Positions 6,264-56,590 of a DNA stretch of 64,000 bases are shown one piece after another (positions within the stretch are counted from its first letter, which is position 1; every line of letters begins with the position of its first letter). The notes beneath the pieces are model-generated. The model searched no databases and was not told the origin of the DNA. It worked only from the letters and a program-made list of their open reading frames with translations. A program made the position numbers and the translations under genes. Where the stretch lies: positions 1 to 64,000 of the IMG/VR virus record IMGVR_UViG_3300027793_000052. The stretch is one strand, 5' to 3'.

Positions 6264-8063
6264 ATGAGACATTTAATCAAGAAAATATTAAAAGAAGACA
6301 TCTTTCAAATGGATAGATTAAGGCAATTGGAAGAAGGTGACTTGTTCATCATCACAAAAGTTAATCAAAATCTAGAAGATTGTGATCCAGATGCTCTTAG
6401 TGTTCTAAACCCACTTATCGGTAAAGTTTGTAAAGTTATAACCACAGATTGGGATGTTAATTTATATGACGGTATGTGTGAAGAACATTATGGTTGGGGT
6501 GCTTATATAATGTCAGAAGATATGGTTGGTGGCCACGATTTATACGAAAAGAATGGTGAATGTAAAAAGGATAAATGTTATTGGGTTAATGACTACTATA
6601 TAGATTATGATATAATAGATGATGTAAATACTGATGAATTTTTTACACAACTAGACGAACAAGAAGAAGATTTTGGATGGATGGATGATATTATAGATAT
6701 ATCTATAAAAATAGGTGATGTTTTTTATATAGTAGATTATAATTACGGTTATGACATGCAACCTATAAATTATAGACCAAATGTAGTAAGATATATTTTT
6801 TATGTTACAGATATTTTTGAAGAAGGCGGTAAACTTCATTTAAATTACAAATATTGTGAACCTGTAAATGTCACATATAACCCAAAAGACTATATTAAAT
6901 CCAAATGTCGTTCCACGCAAGATGAGGTTATTGAATATGAAAGAGCTTTAGAGTTGGTAGATAAACAATATTGGCGATTTATGGGTAATAACAATATGAG
7001 TAATAATATAAACGAACAAGAAGAAGATTTTGGTTGGGCTGAAGAATCCATCTCAGGTGATTTAAATTTGGGTAAATATTTTGAAAATTCTGATATTTGT
7101 TTTGATGATGAAGTTAATGTTGATAACAACTGTAAAATTACCGTAACAAAAGATAGTTTTGTTTTTAAACTAAATTATAGTTGGTGGTTGAATAAATTTG
7201 GTGAAGACAATTGGATGTTGGATAGACTTATCAGATATGGAAGTATGGGATATGACAGTTATTATGTTGATTATGAGTTGGATGATGAGGAGTTTAATTA
7301 TATTTATTATATGATTAATGAAGAAAATAGATATAAACTAGCTGATTGTTTAAGTGTATTAAATGAAGATGTAAGTGAAAATGATTTAAAAAATAATCTA
7401 TATGATGTTTTTGAAAATTTTAATGGTATCTTACCGGTAGAAGGAATGGCCTCAGATGTTGTTTATGAACTATCAAGAGCTTTAGAAAAAAATCGAAATC
7501 AACAAATAAATTTGGAGTTTGAAGATTTAATGTCAAAGACTGTCGCTAAATTTGAACATGTTGGAGGTTGGAAAGAAGACTACATTTTAATAAAAATACC
7601 AAAAGAATTGGTTTTAGAAGCTTTAGAGCAAAATAAGGATGAAAATTTAACTGATATTGTGAAAAAATACAGTTACGTTTTTGATATAAATTGGGATGAT
7701 TTTTATTATGGTACTTTTGATTTAAGTGGTTCTGAGGATCAAATTAACGATATTATGGCCGATTATTTGGATAAATTAATTGATATATTAAATAATGATG
7801 ATACGATACAGACATTAAATAATTTTACATCTTCATTAAAAAAATTAGGTTTTAAAAAAGAAAATAATAAATGGTATAAAACAATTAAAAAAGATAATTT
7901 AGATTATGTTTTTATTGTTAGTGATATAAATGGTGAAGACATGAATTTAATTCTAACTATAACCGTTTTTTATGATACACAAACCAAATATAAAAATTAT
8001 AAATATAAAATAAGTTTTGACGAGTTGGGTTATTACATTAATAATTATATTTTAGACATATAA
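6264..8063 (+). CDS. Modular protein with MRHLIKKILKE leader and two EQEEDFGW junctions
   Basis: Leader plus repeated junction motif. Confidence 0.7.
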   Translation: MRHLIKKILKEDIFQMDRLRQLEEGDLFIITKVNQNLEDCDPDALSVLNPLIGKVCKVITTDWDVNLYDGMCEEHYGWGAYIMSEDMVGGHDLYEKNGECKKDKCYWVNDYYIDYDIIDDVNTDEFFTQLDEQEEDFGWMDDIIDISIKIGDVFYIVDYNYGYDMQPINYRPNVVRYIFYVTDIFEEGGKLHLNYKYCEPVNVTYNPKDYIKSKCRSTQDEVIEYERALELVDKQYWRFMGNNNMSNNINEQEEDFGWAEESISGDLNLGKYFENSDICFDDEVNVDNNCKITVTKDSFVFKLNYSWWLNKFGEDNWMLDRLIRYGSMGYDSYYVDYELDDEEFNYIYYMINEENRYKLADCLSVLNEDVSENDLKNNLYDVFENFNGILPVEGMASDVVYELSRALEKNRNQQINLEFEDLMSKTVAKFEHVGGWKEDYILIKIPKELVLEALEQNKDENLTDIVKKYSYVFDINWDDFYYGTFDLSGSEDQINDIMADYLDKLIDILNNDDTIQTLNNFTSSLKKLGFKKENNKWYKTIKKDNLDYVFIVSDINGEDMNLILTITVFYDTQTKYKNYKYKISFDELGYYINNYILDI

Positions 8064-8488
8064 TGAAAAATTTAATTAAAAAGATATTAAAAGAAAACGA
8101 AGAAGATTTTGGTTGGGCCGAAAATATTATAAGTTCTGATGATTTATTTATAAAAAGAGGGGATAATTATATTATAGATATGTGTAAAGATATGGTTGAT
8201 CCCAATTTGTTTAAAAAAAAATTTTACGAATTTTATGGTGAAAAAATAGTTGATGATTTAACTTCAAGAATGGATATTAACATCTTTAACAACCCCAACA
8301 TTGATGGTTATCTCAGAGAAAAAAAACCATTTCAAATATTAGTCGAATATGATGGAATAAAAATAAGTAGGACAGGATGGAATCCTTGTTATAGTGACTA
8401 TCAAGGTGAAAAATCCAAATTTACCAAAAAATTTCCTAAATTAAAATCTTTTACACCTTCAGACTTTCTATCGCTTATAATGGTTTAA
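8063..8488 (+). CDS. Single-module protein with MKNLIKKILKENEEDFGW leader
   Basis: Same motif family. Confidence 0.7.
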   Translation: MKNLIKKILKENEEDFGWAENIISSDDLFIKRGDNYIIDMCKDMVDPNLFKKKFYEFYGEKIVDDLTSRMDINIFNNPNIDGYLREKKPFQILVEYDGIKISRTGWNPCYSDYQGEKSKFTKKFPKLKSFTPSDFLSLIMV

Positions 8489-11852: not shown

Positions 11853-12524
11853 ATGAGAAACTTAATTAAAAAAATCATAAAAGAAGAAATAATTAATGAA
11901 TTTAATTTAAAAGAAACATTTACAAGACCATTGAAAAATATTTCTAAATTAGATGATTTCACCTACATTGGTTATGAAGACAATGTTAAGGCCATATATA
12001 ATTTCAGATTAGAAACTGTGGATGATAATATACCGAAAAGGTATTTTGGGGATTTGATTGATTATTTTTATGAATTTTCATGGAAATTCGACATGGAAAT
12101 GGATGTAGAATTAAAAAACGATTGGTCTTGGGTTAAAGCCACAACAACATCTATAAAAATAATAGATGATTTTATTAGAACAATAAACCCAAAACTTATA
12201 AAATTTAGTGGTAGAAGTGAAGGTACCAAATCTATGTATAATAACGACATTTTTGTTGATAAATTAAGATCAATATTTGGTCAAACACATAATATTATAT
12301 TAGATGATGACGATCCTGAAAATAGAAAAATCTACATATCAAAAAGAGAATACAATATTTTAAGTGAAGATACCATCCGTAAAAACATGGATTGTATGAC
12401 TTATGAAGAGGCTTATAGAATTGTGAAATTCCCTAAAAAAAACCAATTTAAAGGTATAGTAAGGAATAAATTTAAAAAAGAACAAATACAAAGAATATTA
12501 AACAAAGAAAAATATTTATTTTAA
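11853..12524 (+). CDS. Hypothetical protein with MRNLIKKIIKE leader
   Basis: Leader motif; ATATTTAT at 11832. Confidence 0.65.
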   Translation: MRNLIKKIIKEEIINEFNLKETFTRPLKNISKLDDFTYIGYEDNVKAIYNFRLETVDDNIPKRYFGDLIDYFYEFSWKFDMEMDVELKNDWSWVKATTTSIKIIDDFIRTINPKLIKFSGRSEGTKSMYNNDIFVDKLRSIFGQTHNIILDDDDPENRKIYISKREYNILSEDTIRKNMDCMTYEEAYRIVKFPKKNQFKGIVRNKFKKEQIQRILNKEKYLF

Positions 12525-18460: not shown

Positions 18461-18487
18461 AAACCCACCCCATGGTGGGTTTTTTTA
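18461..18487 (+). terminator. Terminator ending tRNA operon 3
   Basis: AAACCCACC/GGTGGGTTT plus T run. Confidence 0.8.
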
Positions 18488-18522
18488 TTTACATATGCCC
18501 CTAGTTTAAGTATAATTTATAT

Positions 18523-19812: not shown

Positions 19813-20081
19813 AAGAAAAAATTATGAGCAAGGTTTTTATAACCTTATTGGTTGTATGGGTGTTTTCGGCAGTTTATTTGTCGATTAATTCAATTTTTGG
19901 TATCTTTATGGATACAAATCCAAATATATCTAAAGCCATATTAGGTTTTAGTTTTTTAGGTATGGTTGGTTCTGGTATCGTTAACAAATTTATTGGTAAC
20001 GATTTAAATAAAATCGGTGAAGATTTAAAACAAAAAGGTTGTAAAACTTGTAAACAAAAGAATAAGAATGGGAATGTTTGA
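19809..20081 (+). CDS. Membrane protein
   Basis: Two TM segments; C-terminal CKTC. Confidence 0.55.
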   Translation: MKEKIMSKVFITLLVVWVFSAVYLSINSIFGIFMDTNPNISKAILGFSFLGMVGSGIVNKFIGNDLNKIGEDLKQKGCKTCKQKNKNGNV

Positions 20082-20541: not shown

Positions 20542-20760
20542 TAATCCTTATATTTGTATAAGAAATAAAAATACATAACATAAATTTAACATAAGCGTTG
20601 ACAAATAAATAAAACTTTATTAATTTTGTCCATATTTATTTATAGAAGTTGTGGTTCTGATGGGTTTCAGGAACCACCCCAAAAAAGACAGATACAGAAC
20701 GGGGACTGTTTACAACGAAAACCCCACAAAAAAAACTATAAACAAATTAAAACTAAAAAA

Positions 20761-20868
20761 ATGAGAAAGAATTACACATATCAACCGAGTACACCGAAAG
20801 CAGGGAAAGTAGCCGATAAAGGCTGTGATACCTTGAATGGTTGTGGTATGTACAATTCTGTCTCATAA
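20761..20868 (+). CDS. Leader peptide 4 (MRKNYTYQPSTPKAGKVADKGCDTLNGCGMYNSVS)
   Basis: 11 of 12 codons in PKAGKVADKGCD are from the Y/P/D/G/A/C/K set of downstream tRNAs. Confidence 0.78.
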   Translation: MRKNYTYQPSTPKAGKVADKGCDTLNGCGMYNSVS

Positions 20869-20892
20869 GAATATATAGAGAAGAGTTTAAAT

Positions 20893-20930
20893 AACCCCCA
20901 CAACCGATAAAAAAGTTGTGGGGGTTTTTG
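20893..20930 (+). terminator. Attenuator terminator, tRNA operon 4
   Basis: AACCCCCACAAC/GTTGTGGGGGTT plus T run; competing GGTTGTGG at 20839-20846. Confidence 0.85.
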
Positions 20931-20943
20931 TTTATAGTTATAC

Positions 20944-21025
20944 CCGTAAGTTGAACAGGTGGTGAGTTCCGTTGACTGTAGATCAACCGTTTTAAACTGT
21001 GGGGGTTCGATTCCCTCCTTACGGA
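20944..21025 (+). tRNA. tRNA-Tyr(GUA)
   Basis: GTTGA-CTGTAGA-TCAAC; variable arm. Confidence 0.85.
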
Positions 21026-21045
21026 CAAAAACGTTCATTGAAAAT

Positions 21046-21169
21046 AAAAAGAATAGAAGCGGTGGTATTGGTTACATCGATAATGGATATCAATTTGACA
21101 GCAAATCAAACGTTGTGGGTTCGAGTCCCATGATAAAAAACACCGATATTTTTATTCTCTGTTCTTTTT
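21046..21169 (+). ncRNA. tRNA-Cys-like body closed by a Y-like stem
   Basis: GAAGCGGT-N8-TTACATC motif, D-like hairpin, TTTGA-CAGCAAA-TCAAA, GTGGG-TTCGAGT-CCCAT; no normal acceptor stem. Confidence 0.55.
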
Positions 21170-21175
21170 AAATAT

Positions 21176-21254
21176 ATGGGGTTGGAGGAGTCAGGTTTTC
21201 CTCGCTTGGTTTGGGACCAAGAGACTTGCGTGGGTTCAAATCCCACACCCCATA
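21176..21254 (+). tRNA. tRNA-Pro(UGG)
   Basis: CTTGG-TTTGGGA-CCAAG. Confidence 0.82.
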
Positions 21255-21260
21255 CAAAAC

Positions 21261-21338
21261 GGATACGGCGCATAACGGCTGGTGTACCTGACTGTCTATC
21301 AGGTTTTAAGAGGGTTCGACTCCCTTCGTATCCGCCAA
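21261..21338 (+). tRNA. tRNA-Asp(GUC), CCA encoded
   Basis: CCTGA-CTGTCTA-TCAGG. Confidence 0.88.
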
Positions 21339-21340
21339 TG

Positions 21341-21410
21341 CGGGATTAGCATAAAGTTAATGTACTAGTCTTCCAAACTAGTGAAGTCGGATAGTTACCG
21401 GCATCCCGCT
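21341..21410 (+). tRNA. tRNA-Gly(UCC)
   Basis: CTAGT-CTTCCAA-ACTAG; GCGGGAT/ATCCCGC, U73; non-canonical T-loop. Confidence 0.78.
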
Positions 21411-21420
21411 CTAAAATTAT

Positions 21421-21495
21421 GGGCTACATCCCGAAGGCAGGGCACTTGATTTGCACTCAAGTGAAAACGGTAGGGTTCGATTCCCTCGTGGTCCA
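21421..21495 (+). tRNA. tRNA-Ala(UGC)
   Basis: CTTGA-TTTGCAC-TCAAG; G3-U70. Confidence 0.85.
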
Positions 21496-21509
21496 CAAAT
21501 ATAATAAAA

Positions 21510-21600
21510 GGGTCTGTGGTGTGAGTGGTTTAAACCACCTGTCTGCAAAACAGGGATGACAATTAATTTTGTTACGTCAGTTCGAATCTGACCAGACCCT
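21510..21600 (+). tRNA. tRNA-Cys(GCA) with long variable arm
   Basis: CCTGT-CTGCAAA-ACAGG; U73. Confidence 0.82.
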
Positions 21601-21612
21601 CTAAAAAATAAA

Positions 21613-21687
21613 GACCTCGTAACTTAGTTGGTTTAAAGTGCTAATCTTTTAAATTAGAAATCGTGAGTTCGAATCTCACCGGGGTCA
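21613..21687 (+). tRNA. tRNA-Lys(UUU)
   Basis: CTAAT-CTTTTAA-ATTAG. Confidence 0.88.
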
Positions 21688-21688
21688 C

Positions 21689-22342: not shown

Positions 22343-23311
22343 TTAAGTTGTTTTTGGAAAATAAAAATTTGAGTTTGTTATTCTAACACCTTCTAACATT
22401 AATTTTATATTTAAATCATTAATGATAGCCTGTGCTTCTTTTTCATCATACAAGTCTAAATCTACGGTAAAAGAATTATATTTTCCACCGCCACCTTTAA
22501 CTGAATTGTATTTTACGTTCATGGAATCTAGTCTATCCATTAGTCTAAATTTATTGTAAGTTGGTTCCGAAACCTCAAAACTCATAATACAATTTACGTC
22601 TGGTTTTTTATACCTAAAACCCATAACTCTTTGACTATCTTCGTTTAAATTTTCAATCACGTTATTATCTACAATATAACCCCATTTTCTATATGGTGTT
22701 TGTATTAAATGTCTTTTAGCATAATCTCGCCAAGTATTTAAAACAGTTTTAATTTCATCAGGGTGTATGTTAATACTTTCCAAATAATTACCAAACTCAT
22801 CAATTAAAATATTTAATGGTTCTTTCATAGTTTTAGCCTTTTTATATAAACCTCTAACATACGCTTCAACCTCATAAGGTTCCGTAAGGTATTCATAATA
22901 TTCTAAATCCTCTGGATATCTTCTTTTTGTTGAAAAAAAGCTTCCACGTTCTTTTACTTTAAATCTATCTTGTGCTATGTGTTCAATTTCGTGCCTAATT
23001 ATATTTTTTAGTTCAGCAACCAATTTATTTAAATCGGTATAAAAATCTTGTTCATTACTAGATACGGTTATATCTAATATCATTTTTTTATATTTACCTC
23101 TATTTGGAGACAATTCCATATGGCCACCAACCAAAGGTTCTTTTAAATTATCCATTTCTTTTATCTTAACGATTACGTCAATAAAAGTTCTACTAAATAA
23201 CCTTATTCTTGTTCTATATTTTTTTACACCTTTTTTAACAGCATAGATAATTTCTTTTGTTAATTCATTAGTTACATTATCGTACCTACCTTCGTTTAAT
23301 AAATTACTCAT
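22343..23311 (-). CDS. HExxH putative metallopeptidase
   Basis: IRHEIEHIAQ...EVEAYVRG; paralog of the C-terminal module of 40204-42819. Confidence 0.6.
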   Translation of the reverse strand: MSNLLNEGRYDNVTNELTKEIIYAVKKGVKKYRTRIRLFSRTFIDVIVKIKEMDNLKEPLVGGHMELSPNRGKYKKMILDITVSSNEQDFYTDLNKLVAELKNIIRHEIEHIAQDRFKVKERGSFFSTKRRYPEDLEYYEYLTEPYEVEAYVRGLYKKAKTMKEPLNILIDEFGNYLESINIHPDEIKTVLNTWRDYAKRHLIQTPYRKWGYIVDNNVIENLNEDSQRVMGFRYKKPDVNCIMSFEVSEPTYNKFRLMDRLDSMNVKYNSVKGGGGKYNSFTVDLDLYDEKEAQAIINDLNIKLMLEGVRITNSNFYFPKTT

Positions 23312-36350: not shown

Positions 36351-36442
36351 CTTTCGTTTATGGGTTTCATACAACTTCAATATATTCGTTTAGTGTTACT
36401 TTAACCGCTGTAGATACCTTTCGTTTATGGGTTTCATACAAC
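36351..36442. CRISPR. CRISPR-like mini-array A (1 full and 1 truncated 36-nt repeat, 31-nt spacer) overlapping an ORF 3' end
   Basis: GCTGTAGATACCTTTCGTTTATGGGTTTCATACAAC at 36407-36442; identical 25-nt part at 36351-36375; 32/36 identical to the array B repeat. Confidence 0.5.
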
Positions 36443-37347
36443 ATACGCACGCAGATTTTCTGAAATTCTGGGTATTCTACCCCCATTTCTTTACATTTTA
36501 ACCATATTTTATCATAATCTGCATATAAAACCGGTTTCTGATCACCAGTATCTATGTTATCTAAAAATAAAAAATCCCCATTTTTATCAATATATTTTGT
36601 CCATCCTGGTTGTTTTTCTGATTCTACCAATTCACAATCCATTAATTTTTCCATAATAAACCCCTCACATGGGGATAATTCCGGAACATCATTAACCCAA
36701 TCAAATTCTTCTTCGTTTTCTTTTAACCCTTTTTTACTTTTCATTAAGTTCTTTAAAACGTAAGAACCGGCTGATAATGATATACCCATCATAAGTTCAT
36801 CTAAGTTATCAACACTAAAACCTTTTTCTGATGCAATATCTTTTAAAGTATTTAAAATCGGAACTGACATAAAAGTAAAAGACAACACATCAATTAAAGT
36901 TGTTATAGTAACACCAATCTTCATACCTATAGTTTTAAATAAATTAATACTGGCATTCATAAATTTGACAACGCCCTTTAACTCTTCATTTAGTTTACGT
37001 TTTTTTAATTCAGAAATTAATTTTTTTAAATCTTCTTTGGACTTAGATGTCAAAATGTAAACTGCTGTCATAACCAAAAGTGTTGCATCATATTCGGTTA
37101 TGTTTATGTTTTTATTATGTAATAATTCTATAACAGGCCCAGAAAAAGCACTAATACCTAAACCATAAGTTAACATAAAGTCAGCATTGATTTTCATATC
37201 GTTAATAACTTTTTTAATTATAGGTTTACTACTTGGTATACCACCACTACCTTCATTAATTATTTTTTCATACATCATGTGAACTTGACCTTCCATGTAC
37301 ACACGTTCAGTTAATAAGTTTAACGATAATTTTGATAAGTTACTCAT
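36367..37347 (-). CDS. Two-module protein: membrane module plus array-associated module ending in repeat/spacer-coded peptide
   Basis: LKENEEEFDW junction; C-terminal module paralogous to 48217-48675. Confidence 0.65.
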   Translation of the reverse strand: MSNLSKLSLNLLTERVYMEGQVHMMYEKIINEGSGGIPSSKPIIKKVINDMKINADFMLTYGLGISAFSGPVIELLHNKNINITEYDATLLVMTAVYILTSKSKEDLKKLISELKKRKLNEELKGVVKFMNASINLFKTIGMKIGVTITTLIDVLSFTFMSVPILNTLKDIASEKGFSVDNLDELMMGISLSAGSYVLKNLMKSKKGLKENEEEFDWVNDVPELSPCEGFIMEKLMDCELVESEKQPGWTKYIDKNGDFLFLDNIDTGDQKPVLYADYDKIWLKCKEMGVEYPEFQKICVRMLYETHKRKVSTAVKVTLNEYIEVV

Positions 37348-37415
37348 ACAATAATAAATATGCTTTACCTTTCTTTAAAGATAATTTAGAATATTTATAT
37401 AATAAAATATTTAAC

Positions 37416-38078
37416 ATGAAAAAAGTCATAAGATTAAATGAAAATGATATTGAAAAATTGGTTAAAAAAATCATCAGAGAAGGTGAAACCAGTTACATGA
37501 ATGATCACGAAGCTAATACATATATGTTTTGGCAAAACCTTGAAACCATTAAACATGCCGCAGAGGAAATTTTGGAGATGGACAGGGAAAAAATAAATGA
37601 AATTTTAGCAGATGGTCATGCTTGGGCCATGGACCATATTGCGACTTCAGCTGATGATGTTGAAGAAGTATATCATTTTTTGGAAGGTCGTGAAGATGAT
37701 TATGAAAAACATGAACACAAGGAAGAAGAAGAGGAGGAGGAAGAATATGGGCAATATATGGAATCCATCAAAGGTAGAATAATTCATGCTGACGAATTTG
37801 GCTTCACAGAGTTATTACCAATAAATGAAGGTAAAGGTAAAGGGGCTTGTGCAAACAGAGATTTAAATAAACCTTGGTTAACACCTGATGGACCTAAAAA
37901 ACGTTCTGTTTGTGTTAAAAACGCTTCAGGAAATGTGGTTAAAGTTAATTTTGGTGACCCTAATATGAGAATTAAAAAATCAAACCCTGAAAGAAGAAAA
38001 TCTTTTAGAGCTAGACATAAATGTGAGAATCCAGGACCAAAGTGGCGTGCACGCTATTGGTCGTGTAAGTTTTGGTGA
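37416..38078 (+). CDS. Conserved phage protein with leader motif
   Basis: LVKKIIRE; VNFGDPNMRIKKSNPERRKSFRARHKC..RYWSC. Confidence 0.6.
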   Translation: MKKVIRLNENDIEKLVKKIIREGETSYMNDHEANTYMFWQNLETIKHAAEEILEMDREKINEILADGHAWAMDHIATSADDVEEVYHFLEGREDDYEKHEHKEEEEEEEEYGQYMESIKGRIIHADEFGFTELLPINEGKGKGACANRDLNKPWLTPDGPKKRSVCVKNASGNVVKVNFGDPNMRIKKSNPERRKSFRARHKCENPGPKWRARYWSCKFW

Positions 38079-38959
38079 TACAACCCAATACCCCTATAAG
38101 ATTTTAACTTACCCTTAATAACTTTAGTTATATTTGACCTATCTAGATTATTTTCTTTACAAAATTTAGATAGGTCATTTTTTAATATATCTATGACTAA
38201 TTTTTTACCCATATCATAAAGTTTCACCATTTCAACATTTAAAACATCGTATTCTTGACATTTTGTTAAAATTTCATCATCAGTTTGTTGGGTGTCTAAA
38301 AAACAATAATAACCATTATGTCTTTTAATATTTTTAGTATGACCTCTTAGTGTGTTAACAAAAAAATGTATTTTCAAATTATTTTGTTGACAAAAATCCC
38401 CCAAATTTTTAATCCTCAAAATATTATTTTTTCCATCAACTAAAATCCAACTTTTTGATTTGTTTTTATTTTGTTCAATTAATCTGGGCCCGTTTTTTTG
38501 ACTTATCTTATTTTTATGTTCTTCGGTAAATTTTTTACCTTTGTTGTATCCTATGAATTTGACTTTAATTTTTTCCTTATAATCATTACTGTTTAAAGTT
38601 TTTTGCCATTTTTCAGATTTTTTTAAACCTTCAGAAATTCTATTAGATAAATCTTCAGATATTATTCTATTTTTCTGACCACCTCCTAAAACATTATACC
38701 CATTAGGTGTTAGTGAGTTATGTTCATTTATCCAATAGATTTCCTTTTTATCTAACTCATCAATCGATGAAGCCTCATCAATCACTTCCCATTCAAAATT
38801 ATCTATACCATATTTTTTTATTGCATTTAAAAATGGTCTATCATTTTTATCATTTTTCGATTCTTTTAGGTGTCCACTAATTCTTTTATCTAAACCCCTT
38901 ATGGTCTGACCTATGTAAACTTTCCCATTTATTTTATTTTTAACCATATAAATTACCAT
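38054..38959 (-). mobile_element. GIY-YIG homing endonuclease with NUMOD-like repeats
   Basis: VIYMVKNKINGKVYIGQT...GYNV; KGKKFTEEHKNKIS. Confidence 0.88.
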
Positions 38960-39471: not shown

Positions 39472-40197
39472 ATGAAAAATTTAATTCGTAAAATATTAAA
39501 AGAAGAATTAAAGACTAAAAAATATAAGTCTTTAAAACCTGGCGTTGCTGAACTACATGGTAAAAAGATTGTTGTGGTTTTAGATGAGAACGATAGAATA
39601 GTTGCACATGGACCTTACATAACTGACACTACAGATAAAAGGTATATATGTCATATTGCTGAAGGTTTAATAGAAGAACTATTCGATGAAGGTGAAATAC
39701 AAATGGAAAGTTTGTTAAAAGAACTAGATACAAAAGATTTTACTAATATTCAAAAAATAAACTATTGTGACAACATTAGAGAATCCGAAGAAATAGATTC
39801 TGAAAATGTTTTATTAAGTGGTCATAAAGGTCACACAGGTAAAGTGTTTGTACATAGAAATTTAAATAAACCACCTTATTGGACAATAAAGGCTAGAAGT
39901 GGTGAAAACGCTGGGATTGTTATTGGTTATGATAAAACAGTTTGTTTAACAAATGTTGTATTCTCAGTTAGTGAAAAATCACGTCAAAGGGTTTTAGTGA
40001 CAAAACAAAAAAACGTACATGCTGGGGTGGTTGGGTATTTAAAAGAAAATTGTTCTACGAACACAAGCGGTTGGATTCCTGTCACATATAATCCTTACAA
40101 ATATAGTACTTTTATTAGATTAGATAATGGTCAACCTATATATGAAGCTAGTGAGGCCATATTAAAAAATGAAAAAGAAATTTGGGTAAAAATTTAA
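39472..40197 (+). CDS. Hypothetical protein with MKNLIRKILKE leader
   Basis: Leader; C-terminal HRNLN..KNVHAGVVG..VTYNPYKY domain. Confidence 0.6.
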   Translation: MKNLIRKILKEELKTKKYKSLKPGVAELHGKKIVVVLDENDRIVAHGPYITDTTDKRYICHIAEGLIEELFDEGEIQMESLLKELDTKDFTNIQKINYCDNIRESEEIDSENVLLSGHKGHTGKVFVHRNLNKPPYWTIKARSGENAGIVIGYDKTVCLTNVVFSVSEKSRQRVLVTKQKNVHAGVVGYLKENCSTNTSGWIPVTYNPYKYSTFIRLDNGQPIYEASEAILKNEKEIWVKI

Positions 40198-40203: not shown

Positions 40204-42819
40204 ATGCCTTACGAAATAGATCCTAAAAATAAAAAATGTGTCAGAAAGGCCGATAGCAAAAAACGTGTCGGTTGTACAAAAGGTTCTGTAAAGAAGTACC
40301 TTACAGCATTACGTATGAATGTTAGTGAATCTGAAATGGGTGATTTTGAATGGGCGGAAGAAACTATAAGTGGTGGAGTGGATTTAAACAACCCTGAAGT
40401 TTTATTTACAGTTTTAGAAGATACATTTAAAAACAGTAATTTTAAAATAGTAAAAAACGGTGGTATCTATCATATCGAAGACCAATACGGTGATATATAT
40501 TCCTACATAAGTAAAAATGACTTCAACCTACCTTTTATTTATCATGATATTAAAGATAATATAACATTTTTAACTGGTGAAGGTGATAATGATTTATTAC
40601 CTTATTATAGGAGATTACTTAACTTAATAAGACATTTATATAAAAACAACATAAACCAATTATTCAAACCCATCAATGAAACAGAAGATGATTTTAGTTG
40701 GTTTGATTTGGATAGTGGGGTAAGATTAGGTGACTTATGGCAAAGTGGTACCTTAAAAGTTGGTGATGTTATTTTTATCTCTGGTGATGTTTATGATGGT
40801 GAAGGTAAGTTATTAACAACATTTAATAAAGAATTATTCGAAGTCACTCAAATAATCGTACATGGTGATGACCATAGAATGAAATTTAAATGGGTTGATA
40901 ACACAAAAGAAAAACCTAATGATTGGAAGGATGTTTTGAGTTATGAAAATACTATAATAGTAGACGGTTTAATTGATTCTGATTTTAAATGGATAATAGA
41001 ACCTGTAACAAAATCAATTAATGAATCTGAAGAAGGTGAATTTGGTTGGGTTGAAGATATCTTAGATAACCCAATTAATATGTTAGTAAAGGGTGGTGTT
41101 TATTTAGTTAATCACAGAGATAAGGATGAATGGGGGTTAAATGTTAAAGTTTTAGATTTTACAAGTGATACTGTGTCTTACATAAGAAGAGTAACTGATA
41201 ATGGTGATCAAACCTTAAATAATAGTGAAAACATAATAGGTAGAAGTAGGGTTGATAAGTTAATAACCCGTAATTATTGGCAATTAATACCAACCAAAAC
41301 CTCTTTATTTAGTGATACTATAAAAGAATCCGAAGATAATTTTGGATGGGCTGAAGATATAATTGAAAAACCATTTTTAGATTTTACAGGTAAGGAACTT
41401 TTAATAGATGTTAGAGGTTTTACAGAGGAAGAACGTGAAGAATTGTACCAAGTCTTAAAAGGTTATATAGATTTTGATTATGGTAGAGAACATAGAGGTG
41501 ATTGGAACCCCAAATGTATTATAGATAATTATAATCTTAAATCGGTTTGTCTTCATTGTGGTACTGAGGATTTTGATTATGAACCACAAAGAGGTCATAT
41601 ATGTTGTTTATCTAACACATATGACGAACAACCGGCTTACACCAAAGCAAATATCATACCAATTGACGGTAAAATTTTATTGGGTAAAAATAATTTAAAT
41701 GAGGCTGAAAAAATTAGTTCTGATGATTTTGGATGGGCTGAAGATATAATACACGGTGAAGCTATCGGAATTAACATACAAGGTAAAGACGATTTTATAA
41801 GAAACCTAAAACCAGGTTCCGTTTTAAAGATAAGTGGTGACCAAGACGGATTGTTTTTTTATGATGAAATGGTTGAGGTTGTGTCTAATTTTCCTAGTTC
41901 CGATGATAGAGCGACAAATTTAAAATTAATAAAATTTAGTGGTTTTTTAGCAACTGATGATGCTGATGCTGATATGGAAGGTACACATTGTGGTGGTATT
42001 TCAACTAATGATGAAATTAAATCTAAATGTGGGTGTGAAAATTATGGTGAAGGTATAAATCAAGATATGGGTATTGGTAGATGCTGGTGGGTTGATTTGA
42101 AAAACTCAGTAGACGAAATATCTTTCTATCCATCCAAAAGTAATATAATGGAAAATAAAAATAAAAAACCTTTATTAAAAGAAGGTCGTTATGACCGTAT
42201 AACAAGTAGTGTTGTAAGGGACATTATGGAATTGGTGAAAACTAATAAAGAAGGTTATTTTCATTTACCCGATGATGTTAGGGATGAATTATATTATGAA
42301 CAAGAAGGTTTATCTTTTAGTGTTGAAATAACGATAAAAAAAACAGAAGATCCTATAACATTTGAAGTTGGTACTATTACGGTTGGTGATGAAGAATATG
42401 ATGAAGAATACGATGAAAACGTGTTAGAAATGTCAATCTTATTGGGTACAAATTTTAATAGACAAAATTTTGAAAGTTTATTTTATAAACTACAAGAAGA
42501 TGTGAGACATGAAATAGAACACTTTACTCAAGAAGGTCCTGATAGAATAAAAGATAAACCTAAATCTAAAGAAAAAACATCAGAATTACCACCATTCGAA
42601 CATCATACACATATAACTGAAATACCAGCTTTGGTACATGGTTTTTATCGTCGAGCTAAATTGGAAAGAAGACCATTAGATGAAATAATGGTTGAAGATT
42701 TAGATGAAGATATATCCAAAGGTAATTTAACCAAAGAACAGGCTAGTCAAATACTCACATTATGGATTGATTACGCCAAAAAACATTTACCACATGCTCA
42801 ATATAGTGGTGAATATTAA
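40204..42819 (+). CDS. Large modular polyprotein-like protein: five E-x-DFGW-type junctions plus C-terminal HExxH module
   Basis: VSESEMGDFEW, INETEDDFSW, INESEEGEFGW, IKESEDNFGW, LNEAEKISSDDFGW; VRHEIEHFTQ. Confidence 0.7.
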   Translation: MPYEIDPKNKKCVRKADSKKRVGCTKGSVKKYLTALRMNVSESEMGDFEWAEETISGGVDLNNPEVLFTVLEDTFKNSNFKIVKNGGIYHIEDQYGDIYSYISKNDFNLPFIYHDIKDNITFLTGEGDNDLLPYYRRLLNLIRHLYKNNINQLFKPINETEDDFSWFDLDSGVRLGDLWQSGTLKVGDVIFISGDVYDGEGKLLTTFNKELFEVTQIIVHGDDHRMKFKWVDNTKEKPNDWKDVLSYENTIIVDGLIDSDFKWIIEPVTKSINESEEGEFGWVEDILDNPINMLVKGGVYLVNHRDKDEWGLNVKVLDFTSDTVSYIRRVTDNGDQTLNNSENIIGRSRVDKLITRNYWQLIPTKTSLFSDTIKESEDNFGWAEDIIEKPFLDFTGKELLIDVRGFTEEEREELYQVLKGYIDFDYGREHRGDWNPKCIIDNYNLKSVCLHCGTEDFDYEPQRGHICCLSNTYDEQPAYTKANIIPIDGKILLGKNNLNEAEKISSDDFGWAEDIIHGEAIGINIQGKDDFIRNLKPGSVLKISGDQDGLFFYDEMVEVVSNFPSSDDRATNLKLIKFSGFLATDDADADMEGTHCGGISTNDEIKSKCGCENYGEGINQDMGIGRCWWVDLKNSVDEISFYPSKSNIMENKNKKPLLKEGRYDRITSSVVRDIMELVKTNKEGYFHLPDDVRDELYYEQEGLSFSVEITIKKTEDPITFEVGTITVGDEEYDEEYDENVLEMSILLGTNFNRQNFESLFYKLQEDVRHEIEHFTQEGPDRIKDKPKSKEKTSELPPFEHHTHITEIPALVHGFYRRAKLERRPLDEIMVEDLDEDISKGNLTKEQASQILTLWIDYAKKHLPHAQYSGEY

Positions 42820-45624: not shown

Positions 45625-45819
45625 TTATGTCCCTTTTTCTGTATTTTGTATTTTTTTATGTGTTTCCATCAGTTCCCTCATGTCAGCATATATTTGTTCA
45701 ACAGCTAATTTGAGGTATCCGGTTTTTTCTTCATCATTAGATTTATCCATTTCAGACTTTAACCCTTTTACCTTATCAACCAAATTTTGTAATTTTATAT
45801 AATATATTTCCTTATCCAT
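45625..45819 (-). CDS. Small helical protein
   Basis: ORF track. Confidence 0.45.
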   Translation of the reverse strand: MDKEIYYIKLQNLVDKVKGLKSEMDKSNDEEKTGYLKLAVEQIYADMRELMETHKKIQNTEKGT

Positions 45820-47282
45820 CTTTGTTCTCTTATTCTATCATCCACAAGTTTTGGTGGGGGTAGTATTTTAAGCATTGTATTTTTTTCATTTCTAGCTGTT
45901 TTTTTATCGTTACTTAAAAAAACAAACTTATCTGTTAATCTTACCACTGTTACATTAGTACCTGGACCCCACTTTCTACCCCTTTCTTTATACACAACAG
46001 TATCACCAATAGATAAATTTTTGGTGGATTGATTTATTTTGGTACCTTCTTCACCCATTATTTTATAAAAATTTAAAACTAATCTATACGCAATTTCTTC
46101 TTTTGCCTCACTATTTAAATCCTTAGTTACCCCATCTTCATCTAGTGATTTAATAATTTCTGATAATTTAACAATTTGATTTTTATCTTTTAAATTATTT
46201 AAAAAATAATAACCAAAATCATCTTGACTAAAATAATCCGACATATCTTCAAAGTTAGAGGTCAAAAGTAAAGAAATATCTAATGTTAAAAAAGGTATAT
46301 CGTAACCGTTATAGTTATTAAAATAACTATTCATCGGTAAACCCCTATAATTTATTATTATATCATTTAAAAAAGGAACATCTTGAATGACACCATTTAA
46401 CATTTTAGGGAAAATATGTATGTAACCACGGTTAGTTGTAATACCTGCGACATAAGGTTTTAATTTATCAAGAAAGGTATTAATTTTATTTTTTTTATTT
46501 TTTACAATATCACCTACATATTTTTTACAAGCCTCGATACCATCTTTAGGTAAGATAGTTATCATAAAAGAAGATTCCATTCTTTGGTCCTCCATCGAAT
46601 ACCATTCCCAATCAATTGGTTTTTCAAAAAAAGGAAACTTTATATGGACGGCTATTTTGTAATTTCCAACTTCCTGACCTCTAGTTGGGTGTAATTCTTT
46701 TTTATCTAACCAAAATATCAAAGAACCTTCTTTAGAGTATCTATTCCAATAATTTGAATTAGATGTTGACACACACCAACTTGAGTGTATTCCGTATTTA
46801 CATGAAGCCTCATGTGTTAAAGGTGAAATAAGTAACCATCTATCATCCTCCCAAATTTTAACCCTATTAGCTGTGGCCGGTTTTAATTCTTCAAAGTACT
46901 CACACATTGGTTTTATCCAAAGGTGTGAAACATAAGAGTTAATATCTTTTGGTGCTTTTTTAATCCTATCAAATTCTTTTTTTTGTTCTTCACTTGGATT
47001 TTGGAAGTTTTGTTCACTATATATTGCGGCAACAGTTTTGTCATTTAAACGATTAGTATTTGTATGAAAACATTTAACCGCATCAATTATTTCATTACCA
47101 CTTTCCGGTGAAATAATAATATTTTTAACCATCCACTCAAGGTATTTGTTATTACCTGAGGGGTCGTTTCCAGATAAAGAACGTATGGTTTCTTCATCTA
47201 CATTATTATATTTTTTAATGACATCCTCTAAACGCCCTTCATTTATAATCTGCTCTAATATAATGTATTTAATATTTGTCAT
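45795..47282 (-). CDS. DPSGNNKYL-family protein
   Basis: DPSGNNKYLEW and PLTHEASCKYG..WCV shared with 50324 and 55049 ORFs. Confidence 0.6.
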   Translation of the reverse strand: MTNIKYIILEQIINEGRLEDVIKKYNNVDEETIRSLSGNDPSGNNKYLEWMVKNIIISPESGNEIIDAVKCFHTNTNRLNDKTVAAIYSEQNFQNPSEEQKKEFDRIKKAPKDINSYVSHLWIKPMCEYFEELKPATANRVKIWEDDRWLLISPLTHEASCKYGIHSSWCVSTSNSNYWNRYSKEGSLIFWLDKKELHPTRGQEVGNYKIAVHIKFPFFEKPIDWEWYSMEDQRMESSFMITILPKDGIEACKKYVGDIVKNKKNKINTFLDKLKPYVAGITTNRGYIHIFPKMLNGVIQDVPFLNDIIINYRGLPMNSYFNNYNGYDIPFLTLDISLLLTSNFEDMSDYFSQDDFGYYFLNNLKDKNQIVKLSEIIKSLDEDGVTKDLNSEAKEEIAYRLVLNFYKIMGEEGTKINQSTKNLSIGDTVVYKERGRKWGPGTNVTVVRLTDKFVFLSNDKKTARNEKNTMLKILPPPKLVDDRIREQRWIRKYII

Positions 47283-48141: not shown

Positions 48142-48367
48142 ACCTTTCGTTTATGGGTCTCCCACAACCAAGGTTTAAAAAGGGATCTTAAAAAATGGAC
48201 TGTAGACACCTTTCGTTTATGGGTCTCCCACAACAAACTTGCGGTGGAGTGGGGAGTTAAATTTAGCTGTAGACACCTTTCGTTTATGGGTCTCCCACAA
48301 CAGTTCATCAACCGTACCGTCAATTGGTGAAGCTGTAGACACCTTTCGTTTATGGGTCTCCCACAAC
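48142..48367. CRISPR. CRISPR-like mini-array B: 3 full and 1 truncated 36-nt repeats, spacers of 30/31/30 nt
   Basis: GCTGTAGACACCTTTCGTTTATGGGTCTCCCACAAC at 48199, 48266, 48332 and partial at 48142; unique spacers; repeat can fold into a hairpin; no cas gene seen. Confidence 0.65.
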
Positions 48368-48675
48368 ATATTAACACATATTTTCTGAAATTCTGGGTAA
48401 GAAACCCCCATTTTTTGACATTTTTTCCAGATTTTACCATAATCAACATATAAAACCGGTTTCTGATCACCAGTATCTATATTATCTAAAAATAAAAAAT
48501 CCCCATTTTTATCAATATATTTTGTCCATCCTGGTTGTTTTTTTGATCCTACCAAGTTACATTCTGATAATTTATCATAAATAAATTTTTCTGCCTCAGA
48601 TAATTCTGGAATATCATCAAACCAATCTAAATTTTCTATGGATTCTTTTAATATTTTTTTAATTAAATTCCTCAT
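48217..48675 (-). CDS. Leader-bearing protein reading in frame into array B
   Basis: MRNLIKKILKE; LWETHKRKVSTA occurs twice, encoded by the repeats. Confidence 0.65.
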   Translation of the reverse strand: MRNLIKKILKESIENLDWFDDIPELSEAEKFIYDKLSECNLVGSKKQPGWTKYIDKNGDFLFLDNIDTGDQKPVLYVDYGKIWKKCQKMGVSYPEFQKICVNMLWETHKRKVSTASPIDGTVDELLWETHKRKVSTAKFNSPLHRKFVVGDP

Positions 48676-48732
48676 ATCATATAAATATTTTGTATATTTG
48701 TAAAAATTAAAATAAATAGACCTCTCTAAGAG

Positions 48733-55048: not shown

Positions 55049-56590
55049 ATGAATTCATTATATAAACTACTAGAAGAAACAGTACTACTAGAAGGTCGTA
55101 AAGAACAAGTTATGGCCAAATACCCTGATGTGGATAAAGAAGTTATAGAATTTATTTCACAAAATGACCCTTCAGGTAATAATAAATATTTAGATTGGGC
55201 TGTCAAACAAGTTAAAGAAGGTGGAGACAAAGCTGATGTGGTATATTTGGTAAACAAATATCACCAAAACTTAAGTCTGATAAACACTGACCTAATAAAA
55301 GATTATCTTGAAACTTATGACACACCTATTGAAGACAAATTAAAAAAATCAGCAAAAGATATTAATATATTTCCGGATCTTGATGAATTAAGGGTTTTTG
55401 CCGAATTTTTAGGAAGATACTCTGCCAAATCCAAAGAAGAAAAAGAAATAAAAAGTGAAGGTGATAAAGTTTTTGAAAATAAAGATTTAACTGTTGTATC
55501 ACCAAGAACTCACAGAGCTTCTTGTAAATATGGTGTACACAGTGCATGGTGTGTTGCTACAGCAAACACAAGTCATTTTGCTAATTATACAAAAGACGGT
55601 ACTTTATATTTCTTCATTAGTAGAAAAGATTACCCTTATACGGAATATTGGAAGGATAAAGACGGTGGTAACCCACCTTACAAAACAGCTTTATTATTGA
55701 AAGACAATGGTCAGGCTTCATGGTGGTCCAAGGGTGATAGTAATTACGCTAATGGTTTAGACACTAATGATCCTAAATTATCACCTTTTTTCACTGAAAA
55801 AATTAAAAATGCGGTATTAGCTCACAACAGAGACGCGATAAAAAATCGTAAACAAAGACAAATAGAAGATACTTTAAAAGCTAAAGGCTTTTATAAACCA
55901 GGTTATGGAGATAATAGTTTGAAGGACAATTTTGGTGGATTTGTTCAATCTGGGATTTATTCAAAAGAACAATTGGTTTCAATAATAAAAAATGATAATT
56001 GGTTGGCTTTATATGAGAACTCAAATACTGGTAAAATCGTTCGTGAACAATTAGGTGGTGAAACTGTGTTTGGTTTGATAATTGAAATGTTAAGTTCTTT
56101 GGGTGTAGAAGATGTTCGTACAAAACTTAAAGACATGGAGGCACAAGATTTTTTCAGATCGGCAGTAACAAAACTAAGTGATGATGAAAATCGTCAAATA
56201 GCAAAACTTATTATCCAAAAACTTGGTGCAAAACCAACATCAAAAGACGTTGGTAATGATATTAAAATTTATGTTGACAAATGGACATTATCACCTGAAG
56301 GTTGGCGTACATATAACACAACTTCTAACTATTTTGTGGTAGGTGATATTGTTGGTGAAACAATAAAACCAATTCAAATGATAAAAGTTGATAGATTTAA
56401 TCCAGCAGACCACAGTCAATTACAAGTTTCTTCTTGGGTAGCTAAAAACTCTAATTCTAAAATGTACGCTGTCACAACAGAAAAAGATTTATTAGACGAT
56501 TATATTGGTAAAAACGTAGAATTACCTCCAGCAATACAAAAACTAGTATCCCAAAAAGCTAGTCAGGTGTGGCCAAAGGTAGATAAATAA
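55049..56590 (+). CDS. DPSGNNKYL-family protein
   Basis: LEGRKEQV..DPSGNNKYLDW; PRTHRASCKYGVHSAWCV. Confidence 0.6.
   Translation: MNSLYKLLEETVLLEGRKEQVMAKYPDVDKEVIEFISQNDPSGNNKYLDWAVKQVKEGGDKADVVYLVNKYHQNLSLINTDLIKDYLETYDTPIEDKLKKSAKDINIFPDLDELRVFAEFLGRYSAKSKEEKEIKSEGDKVFENKDLTVVSPRTHRASCKYGVHSAWCVATANTSHFANYTKDGTLYFFISRKDYPYTEYWKDKDGGNPPYKTALLLKDNGQASWWSKGDSNYANGLDTNDPKLSPFFTEKIKNAVLAHNRDAIKNRKQRQIEDTLKAKGFYKPGYGDNSLKDNFGGFVQSGIYSKEQLVSIIKNDNWLALYENSNTGKIVREQLGGETVFGLIIEMLSSLGVEDVRTKLKDMEAQDFFRSAVTKLSDDENRQIAKLIIQKLGAKPTSKDVGNDIKIYVDKWTLSPEGWRTYNTTSNYFVVGDIVGETIKPIQMIKVDRFNPADHSQLQVSSWVAKNSNSKMYAVTTEKDLLDDYIGKNVELPPAIQKLVSQKASQVWPKVDK

What the first reader, a model, noticed from the sequence alone, without database searches (positions are those of the whole stretch)
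40204..42819. Polyprotein-like ORFs built from unrelated modules joined by (I/L)(N/K)E-x-EDDFGWAEDI linkers
Seen: five such junctions in this ORF, two in 6264-8063, and one each in 8063, 37347(-) and 48675(-). The same motif follows the N-terminal leader in single-module genes, and the last module here starts LLKEGRY like the stand-alone gene 23311(-) (LLNEGRY). Inference: junctions are protease sites that release modules in the capsid, and their conserved DNA (GAAGAAGATTTTGGTTGGGC) may act as recombination joints for module shuffling.
Basis: partly seen in the sequence, partly recalled or inferred. Interest (0 to 1): 0.7.

Follow-up and report, generated by a model that had tools for sequence, protein, structure and literature searches.

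The report
Shuffled multi-module phage protein with cleavage-like linkers
A 318-kb T4-like phage encodes an 871-residue protein made of seven unrelated small domains, ending in a zinc-protease-like domain, joined by one conserved linker that looks like a T4 head-protease cutting site; relatives shuffle the same domains, so it is probably a cleavable cargo protein loaded into the phage head, though cleavage and packaging are untested.

Summary
ORF 40204-42819 has five (I/L/V)-x-E + acidic run + (F/L)-x-W-(A/V)-x-D junctions and a sixth, LLKE|GRYD, before the last module. AlphaFold2 places every junction in a low-confidence linker between confident globular domains.

The window belongs to a 317,983-bp T4-like virus record that encodes a gp21-type (Peptidase_S77) prohead protease and a gp23-type capsid protein. 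T4 gp21 cuts after Glu in L/I-X-E. In 114 junctions from about 35 relatives, P3 is I/L/V/M in 109.

An 11-residue leader, M(K/R)xLI(K/R)KILKE, heads 21 of 401 genes here (0.35 expected) and at least 141 ORFs in 115 or more viral contigs. It resembles the 10-residue T4 capsid targeting sequence.

Relatives keep the N-terminal mini-domain and the C-terminal module, but permute, duplicate, gain and lose the middle modules. The C-terminal module has an invariant HExxH plus a downstream Glu, and weak structural matches to zinc peptidases. It also exists as about 66 stand-alone proteins.

Best reading: a packaged polyvalent protein cut at its junctions, most likely by the prohead protease; the protein's own zinc-peptidase module is the main rival. 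The idea that conserved junction DNA acts as a recombination joint is only weakly supported.

The parts
40204..42819 (+). Multi-module ('polyvalent') protein gene, 871 aa: M0-G-M2-J-C-B-A
40204..40323 (+). M0: conserved basic N-terminal mini-domain (aa 1-40; three short strands plus a helix, pLDDT above 90). It heads most multi-module relatives.
40318..40368 (+). Junction J1 (NVSE|SEMGDFEWAEETI), in a low-pLDDT linker
40372..40665 (+). Module G (aa 57-154), alpha/beta, pLDDT about 78-90. Found at other positions in relatives.
40669..40713 (+). Junction J2 (PINE|TEDDFSWFDLD)
40720..41007 (+). Module M2 (aa 173-268), beta-rich
41014..41064 (+). Junction J3 (SINE|SEEGEFGWVEDIL)
41056..41328 (+). 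Module J (aa 285-375), beta-rich; low model confidence because the alignment is thin
41317..41364 (+). Junction J4 (TIKE|SEDNFGWAEDII)
41389..41685 (+). Module C (aa 396-494), alpha/beta with a Cys/His-rich stretch
41692..41751 (+). Junction J5 (NLNE|AEKISSDDFGWAEDII)
41761..42150 (+). Module B (aa 520-649), small beta-barrel with weak SH3/Tudor/CAP-Gly-like matches (Z about 5)
42169..42195 (+). Junction J6 (PLLKE|GRYD), without the F-x-W part
42172..42816 (+). Module A (aa 657-871): zinc-peptidase-like domain with HEIEH at aa 769-773 (nt 42508-42522) and an invariant Glu at aa 806
22343..23311 (-). Stand-alone module-A gene with a 7-residue N-terminal peptide (MSNLLNE|GRYD), HEIEH at aa 107-111, and a C-terminal extension
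6264..8063 (+). Leader-headed multi-module protein with two internal junctions (nt 6648-6695 and 7005-7052)
8063..8488 (+). Single-module gene: leader plus motif at the N-terminus (nt 8063-8131)
36367..37347 (-). Fusion protein. Residues 198-316 are a copy of the whole stand-alone gene 48217-48675(-), including a decayed leader (KNLMKSKKGLKE). Junction at nt 36685-36729.
48217..48675 (-). Stand-alone leader + motif-variant gene, paralogue of the C-terminal module of 36367-37347(-)
39472..40197 (+). Leader-headed gene ending 7 nt upstream of the ORF (C-terminal phrog_586 domain)
11853..12524 (+). Leader-headed gene without the F-x-W motif
37416..38078 (+). Gene with the long leader form (…NENDIEKLVKKIIRE|G), paralogous in its N-terminus to head-module gene 138865-139254

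Best explanation
ORF 40204-42819 is a phage 'polyvalent' cargo protein. A conserved basic N-terminal mini-domain is followed by five interchangeable small globular modules and a C-terminal zinc-metallopeptidase-like module. The parts are strung together by flexible linkers with a two-part signal.

The first part, (I/L/V/M)-(N/K/T)-E followed by Ser, is most likely a cutting site for the phage's T4-type (gp21, Peptidase_S77) prohead protease, which cuts after Glu in L/I-X-E. The second part is an acidic run plus (F/L)-x-W-(A/V)-x-D-(I/L), predicted as a short helix. It would be an accessory recognition or retention element that stays on the new N-terminus of each released module.

The same signal follows an 11-residue amphipathic leader, M(K/R)xLI(K/R)KILKE, on many single-module genes. 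I read that leader as this clade's equivalent of the 10-residue T4 capsid targeting sequence. On this model, proteins are loaded into the prohead core either singly or as a polyprotein, then trimmed or separated during head maturation, and probably ejected into the host with the DNA.

Junctions arise when a leader-bearing gene fuses in frame to its upstream neighbour. Afterwards the leader helix decays while the x-E + acidic + F-x-W part is kept.

Shown: the motif, the linker position, the domain structure, the module shuffling, the presence of the protease gene, and the origin of at least two junctions by fusion.

Inferred: cleavage, the identity of the protease, capsid location and ejection.
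For: 1. The genome encodes Peptidase_S77 (105 bits) and a gp23-type capsid protein (210 bits), in a T4-like head module with an acidic scaffold-like gene.
2. T4 gp21 cleaves after Glu in L/I-X-E, and the T4 targeting sequence is 10 N-terminal residues with processing determinants at positions 8 and 10 (PMC9026906). Alt loses 6 residues at ITE-6 (PMC5694885). T-even internal proteins are diverse and share only the targeting sequence (PMC3012670).
3. Junction logo from 114 sites: P3 is I 45, L 39, V 15, M 10. P2 is N in 65. P1' is S in 97. P2' is E in 94. P3 was not constrained beyond being non-acidic.
4. The capsid protein has LISE|T (relatives LINE, LISE) before the conserved FETVVFPIVRR block. 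I judge this, by recalled comparison with T4 gp23 and not by an alignment run here, to be the position of the T4 maturation site.
5. All junctions fall in pLDDT<50 linkers between confident domains.
6. The leader is at the N-terminus of 21 of 401 genes against 0.35 expected. Synonymous codon variation (TTA/CTT/CTC; AAA/CGT/AGG) shows that selection acts on the protein.
7. The leader occurs in at least 115 viral contigs on unrelated cargo, 36 of 98 with the F-x-W motif. All 5 large leader-bearing records tested carry S77.
8. In relatives, the leader heads genes lying between the protease and scaffold genes. One of them is orthologous to gene 139333 of this genome.
9. Stand-alone module-A proteins begin with a short peptide ending (I/L)(I/L)xE before G(R/K)YD, or with the full leader (P0042).
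10. Fusion origin: residues 198-316 of 36367-37347(-) equal the whole stand-alone gene including its leader (72% identity, E = 2e-61). A complete internal leader sits at genome position 80460.
Against: - No proteomic or N-terminal data exist, so cleavage and packaging are unproven.
- L/I-X-E is short and would be common by chance in an AT-rich proteome.
- The strong conservation of P2 Asn, P1' Ser, the acidic run and F-x-W has no counterpart in known gp21 sites, so the motif may serve something else.
- The leader also heads enzymes expected to work in the cytoplasm: a CCA-adding enzyme and a DHH-type phosphoesterase-like protein.
- The promoter-like GATATTTATA box upstream of many leader genes also precedes a helicase gene, so it does not mark late genes.
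- The three public T4-like phages with the nearest capsid proteins have S77-type heads but no leader.
Confidence: 0.45

Rival explanations
1. The junctions are cut by the protein's own C-terminal zinc-peptidase module A, in cis or in trans, before or after delivery. This is what has been proposed for zincin-like domains of polyvalent proteins. The hydrophobic (F/L)-x-W would then be the P1' side of the scissile bond.
For: - Module A is the constant C-terminal element of all multi-module relatives.
- HExxH and a Glu 33 residues downstream are invariant in 50-62 sequences.
- Fold matches are weak: M1 aminopeptidase catalytic domains (Z 5.1-5.2) and SprT-like, ImmA/IrrE and M48 models (E about 1e-2).
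- Module A is present in both relatives that are at least 98% complete.
- PMC5512222 proposes exactly this role for such domains and cites P1 DdrB.
Against: - The junction motif is also found in proteins that lack module A: 6264-8063, 36367-37347(-), and the CCA-enzyme fusion.
- It also follows the leader on many single-module proteins, so trans cleavage would be needed.
- The best-conserved positions (hydrophobic P3, Glu P1) match the serine prohead protease rule.
- The fold matches are below the level that shows a shared fold, and activity is untested.
Confidence: 0.2
2. The junctions are not cut. They are flexible tethers, and the acidic/aromatic F-x-W helix is a short linear motif that docks each module, and each single-module protein, onto a common partner such as the scaffold core, the inner capsid surface or a host hub protein.
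For: - The F-x-W-(A/V)-x-D-(I/L) part is as conserved as the x-E part.
- It is predicted as a short isolated helix in a disordered stretch, typical of docking motifs.
- It is kept once per module.
Against: - It does not explain the near-invariant hydrophobic-x-E-Ser upstream.
- It does not explain junction J6 or the stand-alone module-A N-termini, which keep only x-E|G.
- No partner has been identified.
Confidence: 0.2
3. The motif is conserved mainly as DNA: a recombination joint that mediates module exchange, with no role in the protein.
For: - The identical 20-mer occurs at 7020 and 8099, and shared runs reach 25 nt.
- Homology blocks in relatives end at junctions.
Against: - Codon identity is close to that expected from amino-acid identity plus codon bias: 330 against 268 for the motif, 591 against 547 for the leader.
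- Synonymous variants are frequent.
- The spacer length varies from 5 to 12 residues.
- The one dated fusion breaks at the leader start, not at the motif.
Confidence: 0.05

Closest known systems
T4 capsid targeting sequence (CTS) on internal proteins IPI-III and Alt, removed by gp21 (PMC9026906, PMC3012670, PMC5694885)
   Same: - A short N-terminal amphipathic peptide (10 against 11 residues) that starts MK and ends hydrophobic-x-E.
- It is attached to otherwise unrelated, fast-evolving proteins.
- The phage has a gp21-family protease.
- Genes sit in variable regions and next to the head module.
   Different: - The leader sequence itself is unrelated.
- It heads about 20 genes per genome rather than 3-4.
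- It is often followed by an acidic F-x-W element unknown in T4.
- The site recurs inside long proteins as a module junction.
- Targeting and cleavage are untested here.
Polyvalent proteins of phages and conjugative elements (Iyer et al. 2017, PMC5512222)
   Same: - Many unrelated globular domains in one phage polypeptide.
- A zincin-like HExxH…E domain is the hub.
- Domain architectures vary freely between relatives.
- Predicted delivery with the DNA and processing into units.
   Different: - No known effector domain (ART, nuclease, methylase and so on) was recognised in the small modules.
- The modules are separated by one explicit conserved linker motif. The word 'linker' does not occur in that paper's text.
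- Module A matched no Pfam zincin family above threshold.
Multiple processing of head and inner-body proteins in giant phages phiKZ, 201phi2-1 and SPN3US (PMC5694885, PMC9026906)
   Same: - The prohead protease cuts after Glu in a 3-residue motif.
- It cuts at several sites per protein.
- It acts on many ejection proteins of a jumbo phage.
   Different: - Those sites are S/A/G-X-E or A-X-E and lie mostly in propeptides that are discarded.
- Those phages are not described as having a polyprotein of shuffled modules or a conserved extended junction.

Membership tests
T4-type CTS-bearing internal head proteins | The phage encodes a gp21-family (Peptidase_S77) prohead protease and a gp23-type capsid | tested here: met
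T4-type CTS-bearing internal head proteins | An N-terminal peptide of about 10 residues ending in L/I-X-E, shared by otherwise unrelated proteins | tested here: met
   Leader M(K/R)xLI(K/R)KILKE on 21 of 401 genes. The finding's own ORF has M0 instead of the leader, followed by NVSE|S.
T4-type CTS-bearing internal head proteins | Sequence homology of the leader to the T4 CTS (MKTYQEFIAE) | tested here: not met
   Only the pattern is alike (MK start, hydrophobic positions, terminal E); no sequence similarity. This was judged by eye and PMC9026906.
T4-type CTS-bearing internal head proteins | The peptide directs incorporation into the prohead core and is removed by the protease | not testable with these tools
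   Needs virion proteomics or fusion experiments. The complex prediction gave no answer.
Polyvalent proteins (PMC5512222) | Two or more unrelated globular domains in one polypeptide of a phage or plasmid, with variable architectures among relatives | tested here: met
Polyvalent proteins (PMC5512222) | A zincin-like metallopeptidase domain: a beta-sheet, a helix with HExxH, and a second helix with Glu | tested here: inconclusive
   HExxH and Glu are invariant. The secondary-structure order fits. Fold matches are weak (Z about 5, E about 1e-2). There is no Pfam hit above threshold.
Polyvalent proteins (PMC5512222) | Recognisable conflict effector domains (ART, nucleases, methylases, ArdC-N and so on) | tested here: not met
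   Pfam and PHROGs found none. The small modules have no named relatives.
Polyvalent proteins (PMC5512222) | Delivered into the host with the DNA | not testable with these tools
   -

The most novel reading that the evidence does not exclude
An uncultured clade of large T4-like phages uses one universal, portable loading-and-release signal. It consists of an 11-residue amphipathic leader, a hydrophobic-N-E|S-E-E cut site and an acidic F-x-W helix. With it they pack dozens of unrelated proteins into the capsid, either singly or as cleavable, freely shuffled polyproteins. The cargo would include zinc-peptidase effectors and even tRNA-repair enzymes (a CCA-adding enzyme fused to what looks, by its HxT motifs only, like a 2H-type phosphoesterase). 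The F-x-W element would be a new, second determinant of prohead protease recognition or cargo retention.
Probability: 0.3. Interest if true: 0.8.

Novelty: new variant of a known kind. Interest (0 to 1): 0.65.

Why it matters
If the junction is a true head-protease site, this family is a natural polyprotein system inside a tailed-phage capsid, with a defined and portable linker.

- It would extend the T4 capsid-targeting concept from 3-4 proteins to a large, shuffling repertoire, giving a sequence rule for predicting injected proteins in thousands of uncultured marine and freshwater T4-like phages.
- It would offer a ready-made cleavable linker and leader for loading foreign proteins into phage heads.
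- It gives the polyvalent-protein hypothesis a concrete, testable processing site.
- The conserved acidic F-x-W element has no described counterpart in the papers searched and read here.

Tried and rejected
- tblastn of the whole ORF and of the 26-residue leader + motif against 50,697 phage records: no match.
- Pfam and PHROGs on the ORF and five related window proteins: nothing significant.
- Profile of module A against PDB sequences, and its members against Pfam: only chance-level hits, including Tox-MPTase2 at E = 0.057 in 2 members.
- Foldseek of the three-domain model against the PDB: no match at E <= 0.001.
- Word-based search with module C alone for stand-alone homologues: none.
- Close-relative scan of viral contigs with the whole ORF: only the same phage in another assembly.
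- Leader pattern in the three public phages with the nearest capsid proteins (Flavobacterium phage immuto, Microcystis phage Mel-JY01, uncultured LR756508): absent.
- Literature search for the leader and motif strings: no paper.
- Complex prediction of the S77 protease with a 34-residue J4 peptide: no answer, neither support nor evidence against.
- The GATATTTATA box as a marker of late genes: rejected. It also precedes a helicase gene as well as the terminase, protease and a tail gene.
- First single-linkage clustering of modules merged everything into one cluster. It was replaced by stricter clustering and by BLAST with AlphaFold2-delimited modules.
- The third 'junction' in 6264-8063 (nt 6477-6506, CEEHYGWGAY), found only by the DNA pattern with 3 mismatches, lacks the x-E/acidic context and is not counted.
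Full report
**Setting**

The window is the first 64 kb of a 317,983-bp IMG/VR virus record, estimated 96% complete. GC content is about 30%, and the window holds 22 tRNA genes.

The genome encodes a T4-type prohead protease (Peptidase_S77, 105 bits, genome 138056-138868). It also encodes a gp23-type major capsid protein (142300-144069). These lie in a T4-like head module that includes an acidic scaffold-like gene.

The capsid protein is nearest to those of Flavobacterium phage immuto, Microcystis phage Mel-JY01, a 484-kb uncultured phage and Rhodothermus phage RM378. All of these are below 43% identity. The protease has more than 7,000 metagenomic relatives at E <= 1e-10. The phage therefore belongs to a large uncultured T4-like clade.

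ORF 40204-42819 is one 871-aa frame. It is found unchanged in a second assembly, so it is not an assembly artefact.

It contains five junctions of the form hydrophobic-x-E, acidic run, (F/L)-x-W-(A/V)-x-(D/E). These are at aa 39-55, 156-170, 271-287, 372-387 and 497-516. A sixth boundary, LLKE|GRYD at aa 656-664, lacks the aromatic part.

- two junctions in 6264-8063;
- one after the leader of 8063-8488;
- one inside 36367-37347(-);
- a weaker form after the leader of 48217-48675(-).

Ten more occur elsewhere in the genome.

**The junctions are linkers between real domains**

Two AlphaFold2 models were made, for aa 366-871 (mean pLDDT 82) and aa 1-380. They give confident globular bodies for:
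- M0 (aa 1-40, pLDDT above 90);
- G (57-154);
- M2 (173-268);
- C (396-494);
- B (520-649);
- A (657-871).

Module J (285-375) is poorly modelled because few sequences were available.

Every junction falls in a stretch with pLDDT below 50. Only a short helix is predicted there, over the W-A-E-D-I-I part. The motif is therefore not part of the module folds. BLAST between modules finds nothing but the motif.

**A conserved N-terminal leader**

Twenty-one of 401 genes begin with M(K/R)xLI(K/R)KILKE or a close variant, against 0.35 expected from the pattern's internal frequency. Codons vary synonymously (TTA/CTT/CTC/CTA for Leu; AAA/CGT/AGG for Lys/Arg), so selection acts on the peptide.

About nine of these leaders run straight into the acidic F-x-W motif.

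This gave 141 ORFs:
- Most are small proteins of 100-250 aa, often in tandem arrays.
- Of 98 distinct complete ORFs, 36 have the motif after the leader.
- At least three have an internal junction with the hydrophobic-x-E context.

In those contigs the leader also heads a CCA-adding enzyme, a DHH-type phosphoesterase-like protein (by N-terminal resemblance only) and zinc-ribbon-like proteins.

No paper in the searched library contains these strings.

**Relation to the T4 head system**

T4 gp21 cuts after Glu in L/I-X-E. The T4 capsid targeting sequence is the first 10 residues of IPIII, with processing determinants at residues 8 and 10 (PMC9026906). T4 Alt loses six residues at ITE-6 (PMC5694885). 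T-even internal proteins are diverse and share only this targeting sequence (PMC3012670).

The leader here is 11 residues. It starts MK, has hydrophobic residues at positions 4-5 and 8-9, and ends L-K-E.

I compiled 114 junctions from the ORF and its relatives. The only requirement at P2 and P3 was a non-acidic residue.
- P3 is I 45, L 39, V 15, M 10.
- P2 is Asn in 65.
- P1' is Ser in 97.
- P2' is Glu in 94.

The capsid protein reads LISE|T shortly before the conserved FETVVFPIVRR block, and its relatives read LINE or LISE. From recalled knowledge of T4 gp23, not from an alignment run here, I judge this to be the position of the T4 maturation cut.

In two relatives, genes between the protease and scaffold genes start MGLIRKIIKE… and MNIRKIIKE…. 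One of them is orthologous to gene 139333 of this genome.

All five large leader-bearing records tested encode S77. This fits the model but does not discriminate, because any T4-like phage would have S77. Three public T4-like phages lack the leader.

**Relatives and module shuffling**

A full phmmer search of 1.84 billion representative proteins gave 419 hits at E <= 0.001. About 35 are multi-module proteins of 390-1,238 aa. Most begin with M0 (MPY-x-IDPKNKKCV…GCT), and all end with module A. Between these ends the modules differ in kind, number and order.

BLAST with the AlphaFold2-delimited modules, with the motif excluded, gives these architectures:

| Protein | Architecture |
|---|---|
| this ORF | M0-G-M2-J-C-B-A |
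| P0004 | M0-C-G-B-A |
| P0006 | M0-C-G-A |
| P0016 | M0-B-C-A |
| P0012 | M0-C-B-A |
| P0003 | C-B-B-A |
| P0024 | M0-M2-M2-C-A |
| P0020 | M0-C-A |

Segments cut at the junctions cluster cleanly into 14 families, so homology blocks end at junctions.

**Module A**

Module A has HExxH and a Glu 33 residues downstream, invariant in 50 and 62 aligned sequences. Its order of elements is helix, beta-sheet, long HExxH helix, Glu helix, helical bundle.

Fold matches are weak:
- M1 aminopeptidase catalytic domains, Z 5.1-5.2 over 134-139 residues;
- SprT-like, ImmA/IrrE and M48 models at E about 1e-2.

No Pfam family passes threshold. I call it zinc-peptidase-like, with family membership unproven.

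About 66 relatives are stand-alone proteins of 260 aa or less. Those inspected start with a short peptide ending (I/L)(I/L)-x-E directly before G(R/K)(Y/F)D. One (P0042) carries the full leader. Window gene 22343-23311(-) is such a copy, starting MSNLLNE|GRYD.

Multi-domain phage proteins built around a zincin-like domain are the 'polyvalent proteins' of Iyer et al. (PMC5512222). That work predicts they are packaged, delivered with the DNA and processed into units. This ORF fits that concept, but it adds an explicit conserved linker and lacks recognisable effector domains.

**How junctions arise**

Residues 198-316 of the fusion protein 36367-37347(-) match the entire stand-alone gene 48217-48675(-) from its second residue. 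Identity is 72% (E = 2e-61), and DNA identity is near-perfect over long stretches.

The fusion still shows a decayed leader, KNLMKSKKGLKE against RNLIKKILKE. At genome position 80460 a complete leader (TKSLIKKILKE…) sits inside a 268-aa ORF.

Junctions are therefore relics of leaders of downstream genes that fused in frame. In the older junctions of the MPY family only hydrophobic-x-E plus the acidic F-x-W part survives. This shows that part is kept by selection once per module, while the leader helix is needed only once per polypeptide, or is replaced by M0.

**The DNA-joint idea**

Where two motif copies have the same amino acid, they share the codon 330 times against 268 expected from genome codon usage. 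For the leader the figures are 591 against 547. The longest shared exact run is 25 nt.

DNA identity is thus mostly a by-product of protein conservation in an AT-rich genome. Short conserved stretches could still help illegitimate or microhomology recombination. However, the one datable event breaks at the leader start, not in the motif.

**Verdict**

The most likely mechanism (about 0.45) has three steps:
1. The protein is loaded into the prohead.
2. The S77 protease cuts after the Glu of each junction during maturation.
3. This releases small modules and a zinc-peptidase-like effector, each bearing an acidic F-x-W N-terminus whose role (exosite or retention) is unknown.

The rivals are cutting by module A itself (0.2), uncut tethers carrying a docking motif (0.2), and a purely DNA-level role (0.05).

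A complex prediction of the protease with a junction peptide gave no answer and counts neither way. Virion N-terminomics and protease assays would settle the matter.

Noticed in passing
window 11262-11816 (+): A 184-aa ORF made of rearranged pieces of the major capsid protein. Its aa 21-115 match capsid aa 351-450 at 47% identity, and its aa 101-137 match capsid aa 72-108, so the order is permuted. It may be a capsid-gene fragment or decoy far from the head module.
   Followed up: partly
window 2410-21688: 22 tRNA genes in several clusters, covering 19 amino acids, with three tRNA-Asn copies in a row.
   Followed up: no
window 45795-47282(-), 55049-56590(+); genome 99389-101071, 123707-126478: A second family of large proteins (495-923 aa) shares the N-terminus …(I/L)(I/L)xEGR(L/K)E(D/Q)V.KKYP(N/E)VD. 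The x-E|GR start resembles that of module A. The two window members give weak hits to phrog_17056.
   Followed up: partly
genome 135696-138005(-), next to the protease gene: A 769-aa protein consisting of the leader + motif, a second junction, two small similar modules, then a CCA-adding-enzyme-like region. Its C-terminus has two HxT motifs that look 2H-phosphoesterase-like (by eye only). In other viral contigs the leader is fused directly to the CCA enzyme (510 aa). It may be a packaged tRNA-repair enzyme.
   Followed up: partly
whole genome; e.g. window 48676-48690, 37390-37415: A promoter-like box (G)ATATTTAT(A/T) lies 9-40 nt upstream of 81 of 401 gene starts. It sits very close (12-14 nt) to the ATG of most leader genes. 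It also precedes the protease, terminase, a tail gene and a helicase gene, so it is not class-specific.
   Followed up: partly
window 37416-38078(+); genome 138865-139254 and about 149400: A longer leader form, MKKVI(K/R)LxENDIEKLVKKII(N/R/K)E. It is present on a head-module gene and on paralogues, and is repeated on four or five genes between the protease and scaffold genes in relative G006 (L161).
   Followed up: partly
window 48217-48330(-): The stand-alone gene ends with a tandem duplication of the segment …WETHKRKVSTA…, which is absent from its fused paralogue.
   Followed up: no
window 38054-38959(-): An ORF starting …NGKVYIGQT…, a GIY-YIG-like signature. Similar N-termini occur at genome 206343 and 265759. 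These may be homing endonuclease genes among the leader genes. Not checked against Pfam.
   Followed up: no
genome 139333-139818; ORF aa 1-40: The head-module protein carries an extra basic N-terminal segment (…NPWSVCTKSVG…RCVKDVKK) that its orthologues in relatives replace by the plain leader. It loosely recalls M0 (…KRVGCTKGSV…). No relation was tested.
   Followed up: no
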